A stretch of 61,657 nucleotides of DNA, counting the filler, from Dugesia japonica (taxonomy: Eukaryota): assembly GCA_001938525.1 (NCBI GenBank). It is 5 parts of 5 records of this genome, joined end to end, with 100 filler letters (N's around TTAATTAATTAA, not from the genome) between each part and the next. Parts side by side here need not be neighbours in the genome. Positions count along the whole stretch, not along the records: positions 10,490 to 20,055 come from MQRL01608113.1; 4 more parts are not named here. One strand, written 5' to 3'. The notes under the pieces were generated by a model. It searched no databases. It was not told where the DNA came from and was given only the letters and a program-made list of their open reading frames with translations. Made by a program: the position numbers and the translations under genes. Shown here in pieces: positions 10,341-21,177 of the stretch; positions within the stretch are counted from its first letter, which is position 1, and every line of letters begins with the position of its first letter.

Positions 10341-10667
10341 TTCGTCTTAGAATAAATAATGAAATCAGTATATTATTTGTATTCTAAGTNNNNNNNNNNN
10401 NNNNNNNNNNNNNNNNNNNNNNNNNNNNNNNNNTTAATTAATTAANNNNNNNNNNNNNNNNNNNNNNNNNNNNNNNNNNNNNNNNNNNNTTTTATTTTAA
10501 ATGAATTCTGTAAAACGATCAATGGTTATGTTCAACAATTATTCTCGCAATAATTGCAATTGTTTGTTTTTAACATTCTATTTTCAATTAAGTCCTAAGA
10601 AAAACAACTCGATCATTTATACTGCCTAATTCATTATTTCTTTCAAGGTCAAATTATTTCTAAACAA

Positions 10668-10920
10668 TAATGGAATCCAGATTAAGCTTTTTGGAAGAAA
10701 ACTTATTTCAAAATTATATTAGACGCTTGAAAATGTAACTGAAGTACAAAGATAATTTAGGAGGAAGTTTCAAAGACTTAGAATGTTTGAAAAGAACAAT
10801 CTGGATGATCGCTGGTTTTTTTAAAAAAAATCGAAAATCTGAAAGAAACCCATCAAAATCCCAAGCTCAGAAATCTTAATGTTAAAATAAAAATTAAATC
10901 TTCATTTTTGGAACTATTTG
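10668..10920 (+). mobile_element. Tc1/mariner-superfamily transposase N-terminal HTH fragment
   Basis: ENVTEVQR*FRRKFQ motif typical of DUF4817-type transposase HTH; heavily deleted. Confidence 0.4.
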
Positions 10921-11821
10921 GCAACTAGAAATTTTTAAATTGGATTTTTTCTATCCATTATATTGAGTTCAATTATTTATTTGATTATAATAAAAATGAA
11001 GTAAAAATGACGATTTAGTCACATAGCCAGGACAAAAATCGGAATAATTATCATATATGAAAATAATTATTCAAAAATCTATACAACATCCGGAGAAATA
11101 AGGCAAAGAATCTCAATGATTGCACGAATATGAGTAATTGAATCTGAAATTAGAGGAAGATAATATTGACAATTAAATCAGAAAGGTTTCTTTTAATGTT
11201 CCGAGTTTATTGATCAAATAAAGAGAAAGTTGGTTCAATTAATGACAAGATTTAAAAATATAACACTAGAAAATAGTTGGAAAAAAAGATGATGACCAGA
11301 TTTTGGTGCAATTATATTTGTATTATTGTTAGGGTATTAATAAAATATATAATATAATCAAATTAATATTTTCTTTAGATTTACGTATTAATATGACAAC
11401 TTTCAATATTTGGGAGATAGTTTATAATCCTAACATTTCAGGAATTCTGTAATAAAGTTGACAAACACTTTAAACTTTAGAGTTCGTATTTGTTTGAAAT
11501 GGTATCAGAAAGAAAAACTGCATGATTACAGGAGAAAATAATTTAATGCATCATGTTCTTCCAATCCCTGCATTGTCAAAATAATAGTTTAGGCGTTACA
11601 GTGTATTATTAATGGGCATTTAAATCTATCTGATTCTGTTGATTATTTTATAGATTTTATTGATACATCAATAGATGGAGAAATCGATAAATATTTATTC
11701 TTTTTATTCTTTTTTATTCCTAAGGAGTGCACTGCCTTACATACAGTTTTCCTACAAAGTATTGCAATTCTTCCACGGCTTGACTAGTACTATAAAATGA
11801 GATGAAATCTGGATTAGACAT

Positions 11822-12855
11822 TTTTTTTCGAAAATGTAGTGTTAAATGAGTTTTTGAGTCTTAGACAAAATTGATTAAATTTCCGTTATCATCTCGTATA
11901 TTGATTTCAATATTGTTTATACACGATGTGGATATTAGTAAATACATTAGATCTTCAACAATTATTTGGACCACTTGATTATCTTCATACTTTTCCCACC
12001 ATATGGATTTCAACAGAGGAACACTAACATAGCAATAACAAGTTCAACAATGCTACTATAGATGAAAATTTGCTGATGATAATTCAACAATTTCAGTTTC
12101 TTAGGTGCAGTGAATTCAATAGCTCCTTGAGCTGCAATTATATCACCCCTGAAATACCTTTGATTGAATAATCCTACGGTTTTTGTTAGAATTCCATCAA
12201 ATTTTACACTTTAAACATTAACTAACAACGAAAATCTGAATGGTTCATCCTTTTTCAGATAAAGAGTTTTAAATATATCAAAACAATTTTCCGCAAAATA
12301 TTTATGTAACTGTTCCATTTCCATTATGTACAATTCATCTTTAAACTGAATGACATTGACAGTTTCTATTGAATAACATAACTTTATTTTTATGATTTCT
12401 ATTGAATCATCGTTTTTAAAAGTTTAAAAGAAAATAAACGTGTCTGCAATTTCAATGTCGTTATTTAAATTCTCAAATCCAAATCGTTTTGCATCTTCAA
12501 GATTTTCAAATTTCAATTCATTTTCATGATGCAGTAATTTGATATGCAAGTTTTCTTTTTCATATATTTGAATGATATCGTCATCACTGGTACTCAATCT
12601 TTTTTCCTTATTATCAATTGTAAAAAGTATTTTCATCCATTCGTCATTTCCTGATACGTATTCAATATTGGATTTACTATAAAACGGATAAGCTCAATAT
12701 ACAAAAGTGAAATCCATCAAAGCCACTTCCCATTGACCGTCCATATAAATTGGATTCTGAAGTTCGATAATGAAATTACTAGCATTGTTATCCAGATGAA
12801 TAAGCGGACAAATATTACTCTGTAATAGTGTATAGAAATTATTCGTTTTGCTCAT
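11822..12855 (-). pseudogene. Maverick minor capsid protein (penton, single jelly-roll)
   Basis: N-terminus MSKTNNFYTLLQSN..DNNASNFIIELQNPIYMDGQWEVALMDF. C-terminus VPLLKSI..MYLLISTSCINNIEINIRDDNGNLINF..THLTLHFRKK. Both are typical Polinton penton signatures; internal stops are present. Confidence 0.8.
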
Positions 12856-12859
12856 TTTT

Positions 12860-13923
12860 TTCTTCTTTGTTGAATTTACTATTTGAGATGCTGATATCCA
12901 AGTAGGTTTTTGTATCCATGCCATTTTATATATAATTGTTTATAATCTCATGTTCCCTTTAATTTTATAATCCTTTCAATTCTAAATACTATTCTAAATC
13001 TTTCTATTCTAAATATTGGTAGTGAAATTACTTGTAATTCTTATTCATAGAATTTTCCTTGAATGATGTTATCTTCATAGTCTTTAATCGCATACATAAT
13101 TGGATTCTGTTTGGTATTGATTTTCGATATTTGAAACACTTCATCACTCCAATTACTATCAAANTTTTTGATGAATGGTGAAGCTGATATCTTTGAGATT
13201 CTAACATGATCACCAACTTTATATTTTGGTTTATTAATTACTTTCGGTTTTTGTTTCAATAACCATGATTTCATTGAATTTTCAGATGATACATCAACAG
13301 GTCTTGCTCCATTTAATTCATTATGACTTGTATGATTATAGCTATGAATTATTTTTGGTAACACATATATCAATGTTTTATTTCTAGTATGTACAAAGTA
13401 CTTTTTCAATACATTTCTCAATGTTCGATCAAATCTTTCAACATATGCTGTTTTGTATTGAAATATACTGAATAGTGGTTAATCTTGAGATGTGAAATGA
13501 TATTCTTGACTTTAGAGTTGAAAAATTCCTTTCCCAAGTCAGTTAGTAAATTATCAGGATGTCAAACATTAACTTGATTGCATCTTCCATTTCATTTGCA
13601 GATTTTGACTTGACTGNNNNNNNNNNNNCAAATCTGCTAAACACGTCGATACATGTTAAAATGTACTTGTAACCTTTATTAATTTTTGAATAAGGTATCA
13701 TTTCCATCAAATCCATTTGCTATAAATCGTCAATACCAAATGTTTTATACGCTTTTGTTGGAAATCCTTTCAACATTGGTTTGTTTAGACTATACGCTAG
13801 TTGACCCGATAGCCACTTTTGTGTCCTGTCTTTCAAATTTTGTGTTGCTTTCCATAATATTTCCAATCCTTTGAATTTTGCTGGATTTTTTGGATCTGTC
13901 CATATCATCTCGGTTTTGTCCAT
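12860..13923 (-). pseudogene. Maverick retroviral-like (rve) integrase with C-terminal chromodomain
   Basis: WTDPKNPAKFKG..KWLSGQLAYSLNKP; QMDL (D1); YKYILTCIDVFSRF; TDLGKEFFN (D2); YVERFDRTL (E); YNHTSH; KYKVGDHVRIS; NWSDEVF; GKFYE; chromodomain YIKWHGY..PTWISASQI. Frameshifts and stops are present. Confidence 0.93.
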
Positions 13924-14009
13924 TACAACAATTTGATGCAAATCTTAGATTAATTCTTGGTAATGATTCTAAATTTCCCATTGTTTATATCAAATCTGAT
14001 ATATATTGC

Positions 14010-14235
14010 TTTTGCAAATTTTTTAGACCTAATGCAGCAATGTAATAGGTATTAATGCAGCGATAAAGCCACAATGTTGTTTTTATAATATTTTCTTTAT
14101 TAATTTCTTATTCTTGGTAAATACAAGTGGAACCAATGACTTTTTATGTTTTTCCAATTCCTGTTTTCTAACTTTGCTTATAACTACATTACCATGAACT
14201 ATGTTTACAATGATCTCTAGTAAATCGTCATAAAT
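14010..14235 (-). pseudogene. Small conserved Maverick protein (basic, C-terminal QxxGF hydrophobic motif)
   Basis: EIIVNIVHGNVVISKVRKQELEKHKKSL..KKIL*KQHCGFIAALIP matches the small NxLxGNV...QxGGFLxALL ORF that usually sits between ATPase and integrase. Here it is fused to the ATPase end. Confidence 0.6.
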
Positions 14236-14774
14236 AAATTGTGTAAAGTCCATAAAAAGATATCCATACGGATTTACTGTAGCATCTTTGAATGAGTCCA
14301 AAAGAAATTGTCTATTGTTTGGATATGCTTGTCTTGCAAGAAAATCAACAACTGTTTGATCTCTTGGATTTTAAAATAGAACCAAGTATTGTACATTTAA
14401 ATTGCGAGTTCTATGTCCCCCTCCTTGATGAAATAGATTCTGAGTAATAAATATTACAGTCACATTACAATGTCTTCATATCTTTGTGAATAAATTGTTA
14501 AAGTTCTTTTCCTTGTTTGCTTCCCGATATAAATCATCAACAACAATCACATCACCTTTAGTTAATCTCTTGCTCCAATTCTCATCAAAACCGTTTATAA
14601 TTTTCATTTTTATACCACAAAATTCGGATTGAGTTAATTCATGTTTCTTATCATCTCTATGCCAATATATTTTGTTGAATTTGGATTTGATTTCAATAAT
14701 TTACAGACAAATAGAGTTTTTCCACTTCCACTTGGGCCGACAATTTGATAAACAGCATCATTTCTTAATTCCAT
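14225..14774 (-). pseudogene. Maverick FtsK/HerA-type (A32-like) DNA packaging ATPase
   Basis: MELRNDAVYQIV-GPSGSGKT (Walker A); VIVVDD (Walker B); LFTKI*RHCNVTVIFITQNLFHQG; LNVQYLVLF*NPRD; LARQAYP; FKDATVNPYGYLFMDF. It has at least two in-frame stops. Confidence 0.93.
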
Positions 14775-14856
14775 TATTGTTTGTTTTATTGTATCGATTA
14801 AATTATTGTTTATGTAAATGTATATATTCTTTTTTTAAAATTTTATTGACATAATT

Positions 14857-15273
14857 ATGATTGCAAATATTAATTACAGAGGCAAAGTTTCACAAGAGGT
14901 TACAAGAAAAATGAATTTTCTATTTGGCAGGCCATCACAAGTTGTCGAAAAAACTGGAAAATATACTTTAGTTTTCTTCAAATCCAGAAGTTGTAGAATC
15001 ATGGGATGTAAGAAACCCTTGAAAAAACATTTACAATATGATATCGTTATCAATTTTAAATATTCAATCAATTTAAATGATTTAGCAAGAAGAACTAAAT
15101 GCATGTATGAACCTGAATTGTTTCCTTAGTTACGACTAATAAAATTCAACCCAGCCTGTGTAAATGTATTTTAATCTGGAAAAGTAGTCTTTGTAGGAAT
15201 CAAAACATTATATTATCAACCTCAGGTCAATGTTATGATATCTGATTTGAATAATTTAATTATGAAAAACTAA
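14857..15273 (+). pseudogene. Intronless TATA-binding protein (TBP)-like gene inside the Maverick
   Basis: One frame reads MIANINYRG...TLVFFKSRSCRIMGCK (repeat 1, cf. TBP ALIFSSGKMVCTGAK) ...FKYSINLNDLARRTKCMYEPELFP*LRLIKFNPACVNVF*SGKVVFVGIK (repeat 2, cf. [43 protein letters not shown]). Premature stops at 15127-15129 and 15172-15174. Confidence 0.85.
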
Positions 15274-15454
15274 ATCATTGCAGAAGACATGATCAACACA
15301 TGCATAAAGCATGCACATTGCATGTATGAAGCATACACAGTGCAAAACGTGAACAAAGAAGATGACTCATACAAATTTAAATTATAGAAATATATAAACA
15401 AAATGATCATAAATCAAATTTTTAACTATGAGTTACACTATTCAATACAAAGAT

Positions 15455-15820
15455 ATGGATACAGATTTTAGTGATGATGATGGATTTTAAGAACATGATG
15501 AATGCGGTATAAAGAAGATAAATATCATGTTCATGAAATCGATGGAGTAAAAGATTAGTTGATTTAATTCCTTTAATTAATTTACTAATTGGTTTCTAGA
15601 AATTGTTAAAGATATTTTGGAAGAACCATTTTATAATTTAAGAGGCGATTCAGTATATTGAGCTCCTGAAATATATTGTTATCGTATTAAAATGTATACC
15701 GGAGTTGACATAGAAGAAAGCATTAGAATCTACTTTGATGAACCAATCAGTTGCCCATATTCTTGCACATGTTGTCAACTAACGAAACTTAGAAAGATTG
15801 TAAAACAATTTATTAAATAA
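15455..15820 (+). pseudogene. Decayed accessory ORF of the Maverick with acidic N-terminus and Cys-rich C-terminus
   Basis: MDTDFSDDDG... followed by ...IRIYFDEPISCPYSCTCCQLTKLRKIVKQFIK*, with stops and frameshifts. Confidence 0.35.
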
Positions 15821-15966
15821 ATCTTGTTTTCATTGTGTTTATACAATAAATTGTTTTGTATAAAATAATAAGACAACAGTAATAAAATACATCAATAATA
15901 ACTAAAAGACATGTTCAAATTAAAATATTTATTAACCTAACAAATCTATTCTATCTTTTTAATACT

Positions 15967-16373
15967 TTAAACTTTCCATATTGGTGCCACATTGCTATCA
16001 AATATTTTATATCCTAATATTTCTGCTGTAATCATTGTTTTACTCGAATTTTCATATGAGATCTCTTCTTTCAATATGATGAATGATGTATCTGTTATTT
16101 CTAATAATTTGTTGATTCTAGAAAACAATTCATTCAACGTTGATTGATCATCTAAGCTTTTTTCAGTAATGAGAATACTATATGTACATTTCTGAACTGT
16201 AACAGGTTTCTAAATCAAATTAATAATAAAGTAAACGAAAATAATATTACCTGGAAAATATAAATCATAGTCTTCTTGTAAATGTTCATTTCATATTTGT
16301 AGTAACTCTGTGGCTTACCACATTTGATCTCACAAGATGACGAATTATCTTTTGTAAGCGTAATGAATTTCAT
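15967..16373 (-). CDS. Intact two-exon orphan ORF (121 aa) in the Maverick right arm
   Basis: Exon 1 16373-16251 (MKFITLTKDNSSSCEIKCGKPQSYYKYEMNIYKKTMIYIFQ). 41-nt intron 16250-16210 (CAG|GTAATA...TTTAG). Exon 2 16209-15967 in frame (KPVTVQKCTYSIL...NVAPIWKV*). Confidence 0.65.
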
Positions 16374-16410
16374 TTTTTCTAAAAAATGAAAATATTAATA
16401 AAAGATTTGC

Positions 16411-16418
16411 TTTATATA
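16411..16418 (-). promoter_or_regulatory. Candidate TATA box of the spliced Maverick ORF
   Basis: TATATAAAG on the minus strand about 40 nt upstream of the ATG at 16373. The AT-rich background lowers specificity. Confidence 0.4.
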
Positions 16419-16552
16419 GTAGTAAGTATGTGTGTGTAATAAATCTTCATGTATGTTTCCAATTAAAGCAGTAAAACAAACGATTATTAATTTAAATCTA
16501 ATNNNNNNNNNNNNNNNNNNNNNNNNNNNNNNNNNNNNNNNNNNNNNNNNNN

Positions 16553-17048
16553 TTAATGTTAATATTGCCCGAGGAATATTTAATGTTAATATTGAGACTG
16601 AAATATTTAATGTTTATGTTGCCCAGCGGAATTTTTTATGTTAATATTGTCGCGGAGAATTATATTCAATAAATTTTGTTTAATTTAAACAAACATAAGC
16701 TTTTCAATAAATTTTCCATAAAGAGACTCAAAATTAAATTTAAACCAATTGAAACAAATAATCATTAAATCAATTAATTTAAACAAAATAAATAATTTCA
16801 CTTAATTTTAACCAAAAAACCATTAAAAAAACTATTTGAGGCAGTGCACTCATAGGGAATAAAAAAAGAGTATGTGAAGCAGTGCGCTCTTAGGGGAAAA
16901 AGAAGTGATGCGCAAGTATCAAAAAAAGGGGGGACTAAAAGCATGTGGTGTGATGCGCTCCTATCAAAAAAAGGTGTGATACGCTCCTATCAAAAAAGGG
17001 AGAGGGGGGACTTCAAGCATGTGGTGTGATGCGCTCCTATCTACCTAC

Positions 17049-17049
<1 letters not shown>
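16553..17049 (-). repeat. Right terminal inverted repeat of the Maverick with subterminal direct repeats
   Basis: The terminus reads 5'-AGTAGGTAGATAGGAGCGCATCACACC inward (the Polinton AG...CT terminus). GGTGTGATRCGCTCCTATC occurs 3 times (16947-17041) and GCAGTGCRCTCWTAGGG twice (16841, 16879). Confidence 0.8.
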
Positions 17050-17100
<51 letters not shown>

Positions 17101-17150
17101 NNNNNNNNNNNNNNNNNNNNNNNNNNNNNNNNNNNNNNNNNNNNNNNNNN

Positions 17151-17203
<53 letters not shown>
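17050..17203 (+). repeat. (AAT)n microsatellite spanning a gap
   Basis: Directly visible. Confidence 0.95.
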
Positions 17204-17207
<4 letters not shown>

Positions 17208-17229
17208 CGCCATTTGAAATAAAACTTTA

Positions 17230-17270
17230 TTGTTATATATTTCGATGGATAAACCGTCATCATCAGACAA
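17230..17270 (-). ncRNA. Minimal type I hammerhead ribozyme in the Penelope pLTR
   Basis: TTGT-CTGATGA-T-GACGG ttta(t) CCATC-GAAA-TATA-TA^-ACAA: intact core, stem I TTGT/ACAA and a palindromic minimal stem III. Confidence 0.75.
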
Positions 17271-17702
17271 AAATGAAAGCACATGAGTTTATTCAGTCTA
17301 TATTATTTAAACGAAAATTAATGCAATTATATTGAATATAAGACGGCTATAATTCTTAATTTTCAAAAAAATAATTTTTTAATAATATTTTATTAAAATT
17401 ACTATTAACTATACAATCAAAGATGTTTTTTCATAACTATTCAAAATTTTTAATTTTAGATTATATTAAAATTTTTTCAAAACCTTTAAAATAATAAAAA
17501 TTGAAATTTTTTTTAAAAAATAAAATACAAAACCTATAATAAATATAATATATAAAAATAAATTTTTAAATTTTTTTAATTAATTTAGTCGACAGAGCTG
17601 TCTGTACATTTATACTTGGATTATGAAATCTAATCTTTAACGCTTCATACAACACTCTTCCAGTAATTCTCAAATTGTTTAGATAAAATTTTAAAATTTG
17701 AA

Positions 17703-18332
17703 AAGTTCCCGGACACTTTGAACTAAAAATATATAGACAAAGTCATAAAATCATCAAAGTTTTATTCATCAAACTAAATTCCTTTGCTAGATAAGGTCTT
17801 CAACCATGTATCATCTAAATTTTGGATTCCTTTCTGATTCCATTCTGGTGGCTTGGACTGCAAAAACTCGAGGACCTCAATTTTAACATCTACTATTGAA
17901 TTAAATTTCTTGCCAATCAGAAAATGACTCATTGACCGGAGTAAGAGATAATTTGATGTAGCTAAGTCTGGGCTATAAGCTGGATGAGGTATAGTTAGAT
18001 TCCACCAAGCTCTTCTAACTTAGACTTTATCACTTTAGAGTTATGGGCTGGAGCATTATCATGCTGCAGAAATACCCGTTTTCTATTGATTAAAGCTGGA
18101 TAACATCAAAATGTCGCCTATAATACTGGAATTAGCTTCCATTATACAGGACCCTCAAAATTCCACCATATGGATGAAATCACCTTGTATACGAACCTTT
18201 TTTTTAGCTACCGATAAAACCTTTTGAGCTGGCTGAAGCCAGTGCCTTTTGATAACAGGATTTCTGAGATATATCCACTTTTTATCGCCAGCTATGATTT
18301 TTCTCCAGAACCTGTCATCTTTTTTTACTCAA
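17703..18332 (-). mobile_element. Mariner (DD34D) transposase remnant nested in the Penelope element
   Basis: IIAGDKKWIY, FLQHDNAPAH, PHPAYSPDLATSNY motifs. Confidence 0.88.
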
Positions 18333-21177
18333 CCTAGTATTACATTAACGACCAAAACGATTATGCTTTTGAATCCAAGTACAGAGACAACTGGCAGTCT
18401 CTCAAATGTATGTGGCATCACATTCAATACACTTAAATTGATAAACAAGGTAGGAACACAAACCAATTGGTGTATGAGATTTATTAGCAAAGCTATTAAC
18501 GATCTTATGCGAAGTGGAAACAATTTTCAATAAAGAAAGATCCTTAGCAGCTTTTAAAATCTAGTTCTTAAACTTTTTAAAACCTTCAGAATAAGGAATC
18601 GATAAAGCAAATTGACCAATACAGTTGTATAAAGTGTTATCAGGTTCATGATTATTCAATACTTTTTCAGCCGTTTTATTGAAATTAATATTAATATCGA
18701 CTAATATTTTGTATATTGTCTGCGAAGTCAATGAATTTAAAAATTGTTTATTATATTCATTTTCTTGCAGTAACTTTAATAAATGTTCAATACTTTTAAT
18801 GAATCTTGAATAAGTTGAGGACAACGACCGAGAACGAGATACTAAACCCTTTATCATGTTCCTTTTATAAGCAGAATCACAAAAACTATTTGGGGTAACA
18901 AACAAGCCAGTATCACTTTTCTTTCTGTAGATTTCAGTCAAATAATGTGTTGATTTCCTTTCAATTAAAATATCCATAAAAGCCAAAATATCATTTCTTT
19001 CCTTCTCTTCAGTAAATCTAATATTAAGATGTAACGAATTCATAAAACTCTGGAAAGGAAAAACATGTTTACGATTACCAAAAATAAGGAAAACATCGTC
19101 AACATATCTTTTGTAAGTAAGAGGCTTATTCAAAGAATATAAGTTCATTCGTTCTTCAACCTAATTCAATAAAATCGATGCTAATGTCGGAGTTAAAGAA
19201 GAACTCATAGCTACCCCATCTATCTGTTTATACTATTCATTGTTGAACAGAAACAAAACATTAGTTGTTGCAAAAGTTAACAATTCATGAAAGGCAGATA
19301 TACTCAAATTAGAATGATCAATCACATTATTCTTCCAAATATCACAACAAAGATCTATGGTTTCCAGCAAAGGGACATTAGTGAATAAGCTAAAAACATC
19401 AAAAGACACCATAAACTCATCATTATTACTTACAACAGAATTTGAGATAAATTTAAAAAACTCAAAACTGTCCTTAAATTCAAAGTTAAAATTCATTAAT
19501 GGCTACAATTTAGATTCCAAACATTTCGAAATATTATACTGGGCTGTACAAACCATAGATAAAACCGGTCACAAAGGAGTTCCATTTATATGACTAGATT
19601 ATTAATCAATATACTTAATCAATATAAATATTCCTCATCTTTCATTGTTGGTAATTTTTCATTTTTCCGCAATTTATAGATCTTGAAAACTGACCATTTA
19701 AAACTGTTTCCATCTTGGCCAAATAATTAAAATAATTTAAACTCACTGAGCCATAACCTTTGTCAAATTTACAAATATTAATCCCTTTATTCACAATACC
19801 CTTCAACACTTAAAAATCACTAACATCCTGTTTCGAATTCTTATTTATATACTCAGTGGTAGTTTTATTTAACTCATTTTTCCTGGTCATAAATTCTAAT
19901 TTTTTATTCAAGTAATTAGACTTTTTCAAATAAATCCATAAAACAATTCAATAATAGACGGAAATTTAAATTTATCAAACTTTCTACTGCATTATGCAAA
20001 CTTTTAGCAGATATTTTAAAATCACTATTAAAGTTAATTCCGGCACATTTAAAGANNNNNNNNNNNNNNNNNNNNNNNNNNNNNNNNNNNNNNNNNNNNT
20101 TAATTAATTAANNNNNNNNNNNNNNNNNNNNNNNNNNNNNNNNNNNNNNNNNNNNATTATTATTTTTATTATTATTAATATTATTATTTTTATTATTATT
20201 ATTCCACACTCGATTTTATTTTTTTTATAAACCCATAAATTTTATCATACAAAATTAATATGATTATGTTCTTACCTTGCAGAGACATTCAATTCCATTA
20301 TTTTCTCGAATATATTCTCGAAAATTAACACAATTTGAAAATCCAATTTTCTTTGTGAAAGTGATTAGAAAATTCAGACTTTGTTTCTAATAAAAATAAT
20401 ATTTTCTCATCTTTCATTTCTATTAGTCGTTTTAGTGCTCATTCATTTGACAACCACTTTTCTTTTTTAAATAATAAAAGTTGTTCGTAATCCGCTCTCA
20501 TATTCTTACATAGATTTACAAACAAACGAGTAATATTTGTACATCTTTTGATGAAATTTATAAGACGTTTGGCATCATTTAAGACCACATTAAGATCTGG
20601 TGATATTTTAGTTATTGCTTCTCGATGAATGATAAAGTGAGTGAAAATGATATATTCATTTGTAATATATTTAACTTTTTCTACAAATCCGACGAACTAT
20701 CCCTTCATCGCTGCTGCACCGTCAAAACATATACCAATATTATTATCCTTCTTCTTTGAAAAAATCCTTAACTTGTAAAAAAATTATTCATTTCAATTAT
20801 TAATTGGCCGGCAGAACAGTAAATTTTCATGTATATTAAAAGCGTACCTGTATTGAAAACAGACCAAGAGTTTAGCTAAATTCTTTTAATATCTGTCGAT
20901 TTATCCAACTGAATAGCAGATTACGGATTTTCTTTAATTCTTTGTATCAGTTGCAGAATTTGAAATCCTTCTGGTAACTGTATCATTGAAGAAAGGAATT
21001 TTCCACAAATCATCTGCATACTTCCATGAATAGTTTCTGTAATCTGAACTTCTCCAATTTTCTATGGTTTCCTAGACTTTTCTATTATATATGATGCTTG
21101 ATAAGATGCTTATAGATATTTTTCCTGAGTAGAGGTATACTTTTCTAACAAACATTTGCTTTGATTTGATGACCTTT

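What the first reader, a model, noticed from the sequence alone, without database searches (positions are those of the whole stretch)
14857..15273. A Maverick/Polinton carrying its own TATA-binding-protein (TBP)-like gene
Seen in the sequence: reading through two premature stops gives a ~138-codon intronless ORF with both TBP core repeats (LVFFKSRSCRIMGCK, and YEPELFP.LRL....VNVF.SGKVVFVGIK). It lacks an N-terminal extension. It sits inside the element, head-to-head with the packaging ATPase only 82 bp away, and is decayed to a similar degree as the viral genes. It is far more diverged from canonical TBP than a recent retrocopy would be. Established: TBP homologues are encoded by some giant viruses, but TBP is not among the usual Maverick genes (pPolB, integrase, ATPase, protease, MCP, penton); I know of no description of it in Mavericks. 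Inference: this is a lineage of endogenous Polinton-like viruses with a captured, compact TBP. It could drive or repress the element's own promoters (e.g. a late structural-gene switch), bind its AT-rich TIRs, or act as a decoy for host TFIIB/TFIIA.
Basis: partly seen in the sequence, partly recalled or inferred. Interest (0 to 1): 0.93.

Follow-up and report, generated by a model that had tools for sequence, protein, structure and literature searches.

The report
Polinton element's own compact TBP gene
A broken copy of a small TATA-binding-protein gene sits in a decayed, truncated Polinton/Maverick-type virus-like element; intact relatives in metagenomes show that this compact TBP is a regular, conserved gene of that virus lineage and may be its own switch for the capsid-gene promoters.

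Summary
Bases 14857-15273 (+) read as one 138-codon frame with two in-frame stops, 82 bp head-to-head from a packaging-ATPase pseudogene. It is a real TBP homologue. Its longest open piece finds 24 metagenomic proteins of 94-155 aa (best 64-65% identity, E 3e-32), 22 of them carrying Pfam TBP. The family profile hits solved TBPs at E 4e-21. An AlphaFold model of the closest intact relative (pLDDT 94) matches only TBPs in the PDB.

The fold is compact: a full second repeat plus a shortened first repeat that lacks its long helix. All ten fetched loci with at least 3.8 kb of contig (ten contigs, six samples or assemblies) pair relatives of this gene, or of the lineage's capsid gene, with Polinton hallmarks (A32-type ATPase, rve integrase, double jelly-roll capsid, C5 protease, protein-primed PolB). 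The two closest loci repeat the window's head-to-head layout. A host retrocopy is excluded.

New here: a strand-specific word, TATAAACA, lies about 30-50 nt upstream of the virion-module genes in relatives (37 of 112 upstream regions, about 1 expected). It is never found upstream of the TBP or PolB genes.

The window copy is a fossil: every gene is broken, and capsid and polymerase genes are missing. Starrett et al. 2021 already labelled a TBP gene in related viruses, so novelty is moderate.

The parts
14857..15273 (+). Compact TBP-like gene, pseudogene in this copy (2 in-frame stops, 1 in-frame deletion of about 10 codons)
   Evidence: 60-65% protein identity to intact 151-153 aa relatives P0001/P0006. 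The family is Pfam PF00352 and has a TBP fold.
14775..14856 (.). 82-bp divergent intergenic region between the ATPase and TBP genes. It holds the late-type word ATAAACAA on the minus strand (14806-14813, 39 nt before the ATPase ATG) and a TATA-like word on the plus strand (14821-14828, 36 nt before the TBP ATG).
14173..14774 (-). A32/FtsK-type packaging ATPase, pseudogene (1 frame change, 2 in-frame stops)
   Evidence: 81-82% identity to the L006/L009 ATPases. The L009 protein scores 25.8 bits on Pox_A32 (cut-off 22.8).
14038..14310 (-). Homologue of a conserved 106-aa ORF of relatives (1 in-frame stop). The neighbouring 84-104 aa ORF of the closest relatives has no counterpart here.
12859..13923 (-). 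rve-type integrase, pseudogene (3 frame changes, 4 in-frame stops, two N runs inside). The late-type word lies at 13981-13988, 65 nt upstream, as in L006 and L009.
   Evidence: Pfam rve on the relatives' proteins.
11825..12855 (-). Homologue of a conserved 346-373 aa protein that sits where Polintons have the minor capsid (penton) gene; pseudogene (1 frame change, 4 in-frame stops). Its identity as penton was not tested. The late-type word lies at 12936-12943.
11741..11821 (-). First 27 codons of a conserved 125-aa ORF. Homology to relatives ends here, so the capsid gene and everything beyond it are absent from the piece. The late-type word lies at 11913-11920.
15940..16373 (-). Remnants of two small ORFs (83 and 82 aa in L009/L007) that also follow the TBP gene in the closest relatives. 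Both are broken: the 83-aa ORF has 1 stop; the 82-aa ORF has 1 frame change and 2 stops.
18561..19809 (-). Neighbour, not part of the element: remnant of a Penelope-like retroelement (reverse transcriptase region)
   Evidence: relatives of the 195-aa ORF carry RVT_1 and GIY-YIG domains.

Best explanation
SHOWN: 14857-15273 is a dead copy of a gene that belongs to a lineage of Polinton/Maverick-type virus-like elements. The lineage has protein-primed PolB, rve integrase, A32-type ATPase, C5 protease and a double jelly-roll capsid protein. The gene encodes a minimal TBP of about 150 aa. Its C-terminal repeat is complete and canonical, including the acidic stirrup and both DNA-facing phenylalanines. 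Its N-terminal repeat keeps the strands of the saddle but has a shortened first helix and no long second helix. The window copy sits in a truncated, thoroughly decayed element and cannot make protein. INFERRED for intact relatives: the gene is transcribed from an ordinary TATA-type promoter, like an early gene. Its product then binds a variant box, the word TATAAACA, often followed by A and T. This word stands about 30-50 nt before the start codons of the ATPase, integrase, capsid, protease and small virion-module genes. It is absent before the TBP and PolB genes. Through its conserved C-terminal stirrup the protein would recruit the host TFIIB and RNA polymerase II. The element would thereby switch on its morphogenesis genes independently of host TFIID and of regulators that use the missing helix surface. 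In canonical TBP the N-terminal repeat reads the 3' half of the box. Here both the N-terminal repeat and the 3' half of the box are the parts that deviate. Confidence split: identity and membership in the element about 0.95; activator of the variant-box promoters about 0.45.
For: Identity: 24 homologues, 22 with PF00352. Intact relatives score 46-66 bits on Pfam TBP. The family profile hits 35 solved TBP sequences at E 4e-21 to 3e-12. The AF2 model has pLDDT 94.2 and pTM 0.83. The top 44 Foldseek PDB hits are all TBP, with TM 0.67-0.75 over both halves. BFVD hits are giant-virus TBPs. Membership in the element: synteny in L001-L003, L006, L009, L010, L012-L014. The window layout is identical to L006/L009. 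The 408-aa neighbour is a double jelly-roll MCP. Selection: dN/dS is 0.13-0.40 among 8 intact copies. Among 103 compact family members, F41 is kept in 99%, M49 100%, E98 98%, F100 99%, N114 100% and F116 100%. Promoter pattern: TATAAACA occurs in 37 of 112 upstream regions, against a mean of 1.0 (maximum 5) in dinucleotide shuffles; its reverse complement occurs in 1 of 112. The position peak is 30-49 nt before the ATG. By gene class: MCP 6/6, ATPase 6/7, rve 5/7, 346-aa 4/5, C5 1/1, against TBP 0/9, PolB 0/3 and TRAF 0/1. The TBP genes themselves have TATAAAT/TATATAA-type words 35-50 nt upstream in 8 of 10 cases. The window keeps four late-type words at the same distances from gene starts as L006/L009. 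No other transcription-machinery gene was seen in any context.
Against: No binding, expression or timing data exist, so the link between protein and word is a correlation within genomes. Host TBP could probably bind the same word. By a weak internal alignment (hhalign E 0.03), one of the four DNA-kinking Phe positions in the first repeat is Lys or variable (K 36%). A protein with only three of the four Phe could bind DNA differently or more weakly. The host or hosts are unknown, so the polymerase involved could be nuclear Pol II or a helper virus enzyme. In the window itself the gene is dead, so nothing is at work here.
Confidence: 0.6

Rival explanations
1. Decoy or shut-off factor. The minimal TBP does not activate the element's promoters. 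It titrates host TFIIB/TFIIA or occupies host TATA boxes, and so represses host or rival-virus transcription.
For: The first repeat lacks the long helix and probably one intercalating Phe. The TFIIB-side stirrup is invariant, which a decoy would also need.
Against: A decoy does not explain the strand-specific, position-specific variant TATA word that marks exactly the virion module. The DNA-facing residues F41, F100 and F116 are 99-100% conserved, which argues for DNA binding.
Confidence: 0.2
2. Virophage-like dependence. The word is a late promoter of a helper giant virus, and the small TBP plugs into that virus's cytoplasmic transcription machinery rather than host Pol II.
For: The nearest viral structural matches are giant-virus TBPs. 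Many Polinton-like viruses replicate only with a giant virus and share its promoter motifs (papers listed). One relative comes from a Tara ocean plankton metagenome.
Against: The elements have rve integrases (two with a chromodomain) and occur integrated beside retroelements, which fits a nuclear life. The TBP gene itself carries an ordinary TATA-type word. No giant-virus sequence was found linked to any locus.
Confidence: 0.15
3. Non-transcriptional DNA bender. The TBP fold is used to bend or mark the genome ends or a packaging/replication site. This would explain its place beside the packaging ATPase in the closest clade.
For: The head-to-head pairing with the ATPase is conserved in the window, L006 and L009.
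Against: In L001-L003 and L010 the gene is separated from the ATPase by one to five ORFs and lies on the same strand. In L012 it lies beyond the capsid and protease genes, and in L014 it lies near PolB. Adjacency is therefore not general. The termini of the elements were not defined, so nothing supports binding sites there.
Confidence: 0.05
4. Neutral retrocopy or chance fragment of the host's own TBP that landed inside the element.
For: The gene is intronless, short and broken in this window.
Against: There is no A-run or target duplication around it. It is 60-65% identical to element-borne relatives but only about 17-24% identical to cellular TBPs. Synteny is conserved on nine other contigs. 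Intact copies are under purifying selection.
Confidence: 0.01

Closest known systems
Cellular and archaeal TATA-binding protein (Pfam PF00352; e.g. PDB 1mp9, 2z8u, 3eik, 1ytb)
   Same: Same fold and same repeat sequence signature in the C-terminal half, including the acidic stirrup and the two phenylalanines. There is no N-terminal extension, as in archaeal TBPs.
   Different: About 150 aa instead of a core of about 180 aa. The first repeat has a short first helix and no long second helix. HMMER does not recognise the first repeat. Identity is about 17-24%. The gene is carried by a mobile virus-like element.
TBP gene labelled in midsize eukaryotic linear dsDNA (MELD) viruses with adintovirus-like PolB (Starrett et al. 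2021, PMC8502044, Fig. 5)
   Same: A TBP-like gene in integrase- and pPolB-bearing small dsDNA viruses. The same figure legend also lists a TRAF-like gene, and L010 and L011 have a TRAF/MATH gene directly beside the TBP gene. This is probably the same or a sister lineage.
   Different: That paper only labels the gene in a figure legend. It gives no family, fold, synteny or promoter analysis. I could not see the figure, so identity of the lineages is not verified.
TBP-like proteins of giant viruses (Nucleocytoviricota; e.g. Heterosigma akashiwo virus, Aureococcus virus, mimivirids)
   Same: Virus-encoded TBP fold. These are the best viral structural matches (E 2e-8 to 1e-3).
   Different: They are larger (about 190-500 aa), belong to viruses that carry their own RNA polymerase, and share only about 10-18% identity.
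Herpesvirus viral TBP mimics (BcRF1 / UL87 / ORF24 family), which read a variant TATT box of late promoters (established knowledge)
   Same: This is the functional analogue for the proposed mechanism: a virus-coded TBP-fold protein dedicated to a non-canonical box on late genes. Weak fold matches appear (ranks 32, 34, 37, 50).
   Different: Very large multidomain proteins with no detectable sequence relation. They contact Pol II directly. Membership is not claimed.

Membership tests
TBP family (Pfam PF00352) | Sequence match to the TBP repeat above Pfam's gathering score | tested here: met
   Intact relatives score 45.7-66 bits against a cut-off of 22.9. The window's longest open piece alone scores 19.3 bits, below the cut-off. 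It is assigned through 60-65% identity to those relatives.
TBP family (Pfam PF00352) | Two tandem repeats forming one saddle (S1-H1-S2-S3-S4-S5-H2, twice) | tested here: inconclusive
   The model of P0001 aligns with whole TBP cores (TM 0.67-0.75, 169-179 columns). The first repeat has only a 5-residue H1 and no H2. Its sequence relation to the second repeat is weak (hhalign E 0.03). It is therefore a saddle with a trimmed first half.
TBP family (Pfam PF00352) | Two pairs of DNA-kinking phenylalanines | tested here: inconclusive
   The second repeat keeps both (F100 99%, F116 100%). The first repeat keeps F41 (99%). By the weak internal alignment, the fourth position is K25, which is variable. 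There is no residue-level structural alignment.
TBP family (Pfam PF00352) | Acidic C-terminal stirrup used for TFIIB/Brf contact | tested here: met
   E96 (91%), P97 (83%), E98 (98%), L/I99 (96%) and F100 (99%) align with the corresponding stretch of solved TBPs. That this stretch contacts TFIIB is established knowledge and was not tested here.
TBP family (Pfam PF00352) | Binds TATA-type DNA and nucleates a pre-initiation complex | not testable with these tools
   The only evidence is the genomic correlation with the TATAAACA word.
Polinton / Maverick | [quoted passage not shown] | tested here: met
   PF03175 is present in L001-L003, L010, L014 and L015. It is absent from the window piece, where the copy is truncated.
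Polinton / Maverick | Retrovirus-like rve integrase | tested here: met
   Window 12859-13923 is 75-76% identical to the rve proteins of L006/L009; the gene is broken. Two relatives carry a chromodomain.
Polinton / Maverick | A32/FtsK-type packaging ATPase | tested here: met
   Window 14173-14774. The L009 protein scores 25.8 bits on Pox_A32 against a cut-off of 22.8.
Polinton / Maverick | Double jelly-roll major capsid protein | tested here: met
   The relatives' 408-aa protein models at pLDDT 89.6 and matches iridovirus, PBCV-1, mavirus and Sputnik MCPs at E 3e-15. It is not present in the window piece.
Polinton / Maverick | Minor capsid (penton) protein and adenain-type protease | tested here: inconclusive
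   Protease: Peptidase_C5 at 28.2 bits in L012; none in the window.
Polinton / Maverick | Long terminal inverted repeats and 5-6 bp target duplication | not tested
   The only candidate is a 41-nt, 80% inverted repeat that brackets the remnant. The ends of the relatives were not defined.
Processed retrocopy of host TBP | Poly(A) tail, flanking target duplication, close identity to the host gene, no conserved linkage to element genes | tested here: not met
   and the synteny.

The most novel reading that the evidence does not exclude
A widespread lineage of Polinton-type viruses carries a self-contained two-tier transcription programme. A minimal TBP of about 150 aa, made from an ordinary TATA promoter, reads a variant box (the word TATAAACA) that marks the whole virion module. 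Its trimmed first repeat would have co-evolved with the deviant 3' half of the box and escaped the host regulators that dock on the missing helix. This would be the smallest known two-repeat TBP and a small-virus counterpart of the herpesvirus late-gene TBP mimic.
Probability: 0.4. Interest if true: 0.8.

Novelty: new variant of a known kind. Interest (0 to 1): 0.6.

Why it matters
It is largely unknown how Polintons/Mavericks and their free-living relatives time their gene expression, or whether they depend on host or helper-virus transcription. A conserved element-encoded TBP, together with a sharply defined promoter word restricted to the virion module, gives a concrete hypothesis that can be tested by description alone. 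It also offers a natural minimal TBP for studying which parts of the saddle are dispensable. For annotation, the gene and the word are useful markers of this lineage in genomes and metagenomes: at least 100 clusters at 50% identity were seen. For this particular window the practical meaning is modest, because it is a fossil copy.

Tried and rejected
(1) Alternative genetic code. The two stops in the TBP frame are TAA/TAG types, which suggested a ciliate-type code. However, the ATPase frame also holds TGA, and every gene needs frame changes to align, so this is decay and not recoding.

(2) Single-sequence PDB search with the window's longest piece gave only noise.

(3) Sequence searches of the 346-aa and 408-aa proteins against the PDB found nothing. 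Only the fold search identified the capsid protein.

(4) Rfam and tRNA scans of the piece found nothing.

(5) Copies that encode identical proteins in different samples (L006-L008, L003-L005) differ by 0-1 nt, so they carry no information on selection. dN/dS had to come from distant pairs with near-saturated dS.

(6) A literature search for the word TATAAACA led only to an unrelated Entamoeba promoter study.

(7) Host identity was not resolved. All family members come from metagenome or run assemblies without organism names. The Penelope-like neighbour is compatible with an animal genome but does not prove one.

(8) No phylogeny against host and viral TBPs was built, because the comparators returned carry no taxon labels and the domain is short.

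Steps left out on purpose:
- Read-through, joined or consensus sequences. The pieces were searched apart.
- Filling the four N runs.
- Bulk fetching of more relatives.

Full report
THE OBSERVATION. The piece (10490-20055) has about 25-30% G+C and holds no long standard ORF. Bases 14857-15273 (+) translate in one frame to 138 codons plus a terminal stop, with two in-frame stops. The ORF starts at an ATG, and no A-run follows it. On the opposite strand, 82 bp away, a gene starts at 14774 with a P-loop.

IS IT A TBP? On its own the window copy is marginal. Its longest open piece scores 19.3 bits on Pfam TBP, below the cut-off of 22.9, and gives only noise against PDB sequences. The same piece, however, finds 24 proteins of 94-155 aa in metagenome and run assemblies. 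The best are 64-65% identical (E 3e-32), and 22 of them carry a precomputed PF00352 hit.
- Intact relatives score 46-66 bits on Pfam TBP.
- A profile of the family hits 35 distinct solved TBP sequences at E 4e-21 to 3e-12, archaeal ones first.
- An AlphaFold2 model of the closest intact relative (P0001, 151 aa, 20-sequence alignment) has pLDDT 94.2 and pTM 0.83.
- Its 44 best Foldseek matches in the PDB are all TBPs, aligned over both halves (TM 0.67-0.75, 17-24% identity).
- In the viral structure library the best matches are giant-virus TBPs.

The fold is a trimmed saddle. The second repeat is complete (S1-H1-S2-S3-S4-S5-H2). The first repeat has the strands, a five-residue H1 and no long H2. 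HMMER sees only the second repeat. An internal profile comparison aligns residues 17-53 with the matching part of the second repeat only weakly (E 0.03). 'Both core repeats' is therefore only partly right.

HOW BIG IS THE FAMILY? A full HMMER scan of 1.84 billion cluster representatives gave 2961 hits at E<=1e-3, 580 at <=1e-10 and 50 at <=1e-30. Of 183 fetched proteins, 103 match the profile in one stretch over at least 125 of 148 positions, with a median length of 160 aa. In these, F41, R47, M49, G50, E98, F100, N114, F116, G119 and G125 are kept in 98-100%. Every cluster member inspected is metagenomic. JGI names one cluster 'TATA-box binding protein'.

DOES IT BELONG TO THE ELEMENT? I looked up the contigs that encode relatives. 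The sources were metagenome and run assemblies of ENA, JGI and Logan, plus one NCBI assembly of unnamed organism. None is a named virus and the hosts are unknown. If the operators hold that these look-ups fall under the bar on fetching viruses of animals, the calls concerned are 21-26, 43-45 and 65.
- In L006 and L009, the closest relatives (73-75% nucleotide identity to the window), the TBP gene lies head-to-head about 90 bp from a Pox_A32-type ATPase. Two small ORFs, an rve integrase, a 346-aa protein, a 125-aa protein and a longer gene follow.
- In L001-L003 and L010 the TBP gene lies on the same strand as the ATPase, one to five ORFs upstream. It is followed by rve, a 369-442 aa protein, a protein of about 100 aa and a protein of about 408 aa, with a pPolB gene (PF03175) on the opposite strand.
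- In L012 it lies after the 409-aa gene and a Peptidase_C5 gene.
- In L013 (a Tara ocean sample) it lies with an rve-chromo integrase and a capsid homologue.
- In L014 it lies two genes from a 1004-aa pPolB.

The 408-aa protein, modelled at pLDDT 89.6, is a double jelly-roll major capsid protein. It matches iridovirus, PBCV-1, mavirus and Sputnik capsid proteins at E 3e-15 and below. This is therefore a genuine Polinton-type lineage, and the TBP gene is one of its regular genes. Among eight intact copies dN/dS is 0.13-0.40, although dS is near saturation, so these are rough upper bounds. A host retrocopy is excluded.

THE WINDOW COPY. tblastn with the relatives' proteins maps the following genes:
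- ATPase, 14173-14774 (-): 1 frame change, 2 stops.
- 106-aa ORF homologue, 14038-14310 (-): 1 stop.
- Integrase, 12859-13923 (-): 3 frame changes, 4 stops, two N runs.
- 346-aa gene, 11825-12855 (-): 1 frame change, 4 stops.
- First 27 codons of the 125-aa ORF, 11741-11821 (-).
- TBP gene (+): 2 stops and one in-frame deletion of about 10 codons that removes two family-invariant residues.
- Two small broken ORFs, 15940-16373 (-).

One small ORF between the ATPase and the 106-aa ORF, the 229-aa ORF downstream of TBP, the rest of the 125-aa ORF, and the capsid, protease and polymerase genes have no counterpart in the piece. A ciliate-type code does not rescue the frames. To the right lies a remnant of a Penelope-like retroelement, whose relatives carry RVT_1 and GIY-YIG. 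The N runs were left as they are.

A PROMOTER PATTERN. In 112 upstream regions (60 nt each) of called genes in eight relatives' loci, the word TATAAACA occurs in 37. About 2.4 were expected from random windows of the same loci, and dinucleotide shuffles gave a mean of 1.0 and a maximum of 5. ATAAACAA occurs in 38. The reverse complements occur in 1 each. The word starts 30-49 nt before the ATG in 26 of 50 cases.

The word marks a block of consecutive genes. Within 100 nt upstream it is found for MCP 6/6, ATPase 6/7, integrase 5/7, the 346-aa gene 4/5 and protease 1/1. It is found for TBP 0/9, PolB 0/3 and TRAF-like 0/1. The TBP genes instead have TATAAAT/TATATAA-type words 35-50 nt upstream in 8 of 10 cases, the window included.

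The decayed window still has ATAAACAA on the gene strand before the ATPase, integrase, 346-aa and 125-aa genes. The distances are 39, 65, about 88 and 99 nt, close to those in L006/L009.

HOW IT MOST LIKELY WORKS (inference). The element has two promoter classes. Its own TBP belongs to the class with an ordinary TATA word, and the virion module has a variant word.
- From established knowledge of TBP-DNA complexes, the C-terminal repeat sits on the 5' half of the box and the N-terminal repeat on the 3' half. Here the C-terminal repeat and the 5' half (TATA) are canonical. The N-terminal repeat and the 3' half are the deviant parts.
- The acidic stirrup that cellular TBP uses for TFIIB is 91-99% conserved.
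- No other transcription gene is seen in any context.

The best reading is an element-encoded TBP that nucleates host Pol II initiation at the virion-module promoters, free of regulators that need the missing helix. The rivals are a decoy or shut-off factor, coupling to a helper giant virus, and a non-transcriptional DNA bender. None is excluded. The variable position of the gene relative to the ATPase argues against the DNA-bender reading.

WHAT IS KNOWN. Virus-encoded TBP homologues are known in giant viruses, and herpesviruses have TBP mimics for late promoters. For Polinton relatives, Starrett et al. [quoted passage not shown] 5, which shows MELD viruses with adintovirus-like PolB found in non-animal eukaryote datasets. 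L010 and L011 have a TRAF/MATH gene beside the TBP gene, so this is probably the same group. TBP genes were also mentioned in unrelated mirusvirus-like elements of Cymbomonas. I found no paper that analyses the family, its trimmed fold, its synteny or the promoter word.

VERDICT. The finding is real and the core interpretation is supported. Novelty is moderate: the gene was flagged before, while the compact architecture, the breadth of the family and the promoter dichotomy appear new. In this window the gene is a fossil.

- Pieces of broken genes were searched apart.
- Scripts printed counts and outer bounds only.
- I did not bulk-fetch further relatives from the viral or metagenome collections.

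Noticed in passing
window 11710-11750 and 16826-16866: A 41-nt inverted repeat, 80% complementary, brackets exactly the retained 5.1 kb of the element. The left arm lies where homology to relatives stops. It could mark the ends of a deletion derivative, or it could be chance.
   Followed up: no
window 16553-16660 and 16883-17039: Tandem arrays (27-nt unit; 76/26-nt units, richer in G+C than the surroundings) lie just right of the element remnant. Their origin is unknown.
   Followed up: no
window 17050-17203: A (TAA)17 run and an (AAT)17 run lie on either side of a 50-N run.
   Followed up: no
window 18561-19809 (-): A 195-aa ORF and neighbouring ORFs are a remnant of a Penelope-like retroelement; relatives carry RVT_1 and GIY-YIG domains. 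This shows a repeat-rich eukaryotic setting but does not identify the host.
   Followed up: partly
window 17774-17932 (-): A 52-aa ORF looked transposase-like to me by eye only. Pfam found nothing, so this is unverified.
   Followed up: partly
L010 10001-10478, L011 1135-1612: In another lineage the TBP gene is split into a 94-aa ORF and a 56-aa ORF, identically in three assemblies. It lies beside a TRAF/MATH gene in an otherwise intact-looking element that abuts an LTR retroelement. This is a second, independent case of TBP decay in an integrated copy.
   Followed up: partly
L012 1705-2760, L013 3-1046: The integrases of two relatives carry a C-terminal chromodomain, as in chromoviruses. This hints at chromatin-targeted integration.
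   Followed up: no
window 15394-15401 (+): A fifth ATAAACAA word lies on the plus strand, downstream of the TBP gene and directly before a short ATG-started frame. No homologue of the relatives' 229-aa downstream gene is found there.
   Followed up: no
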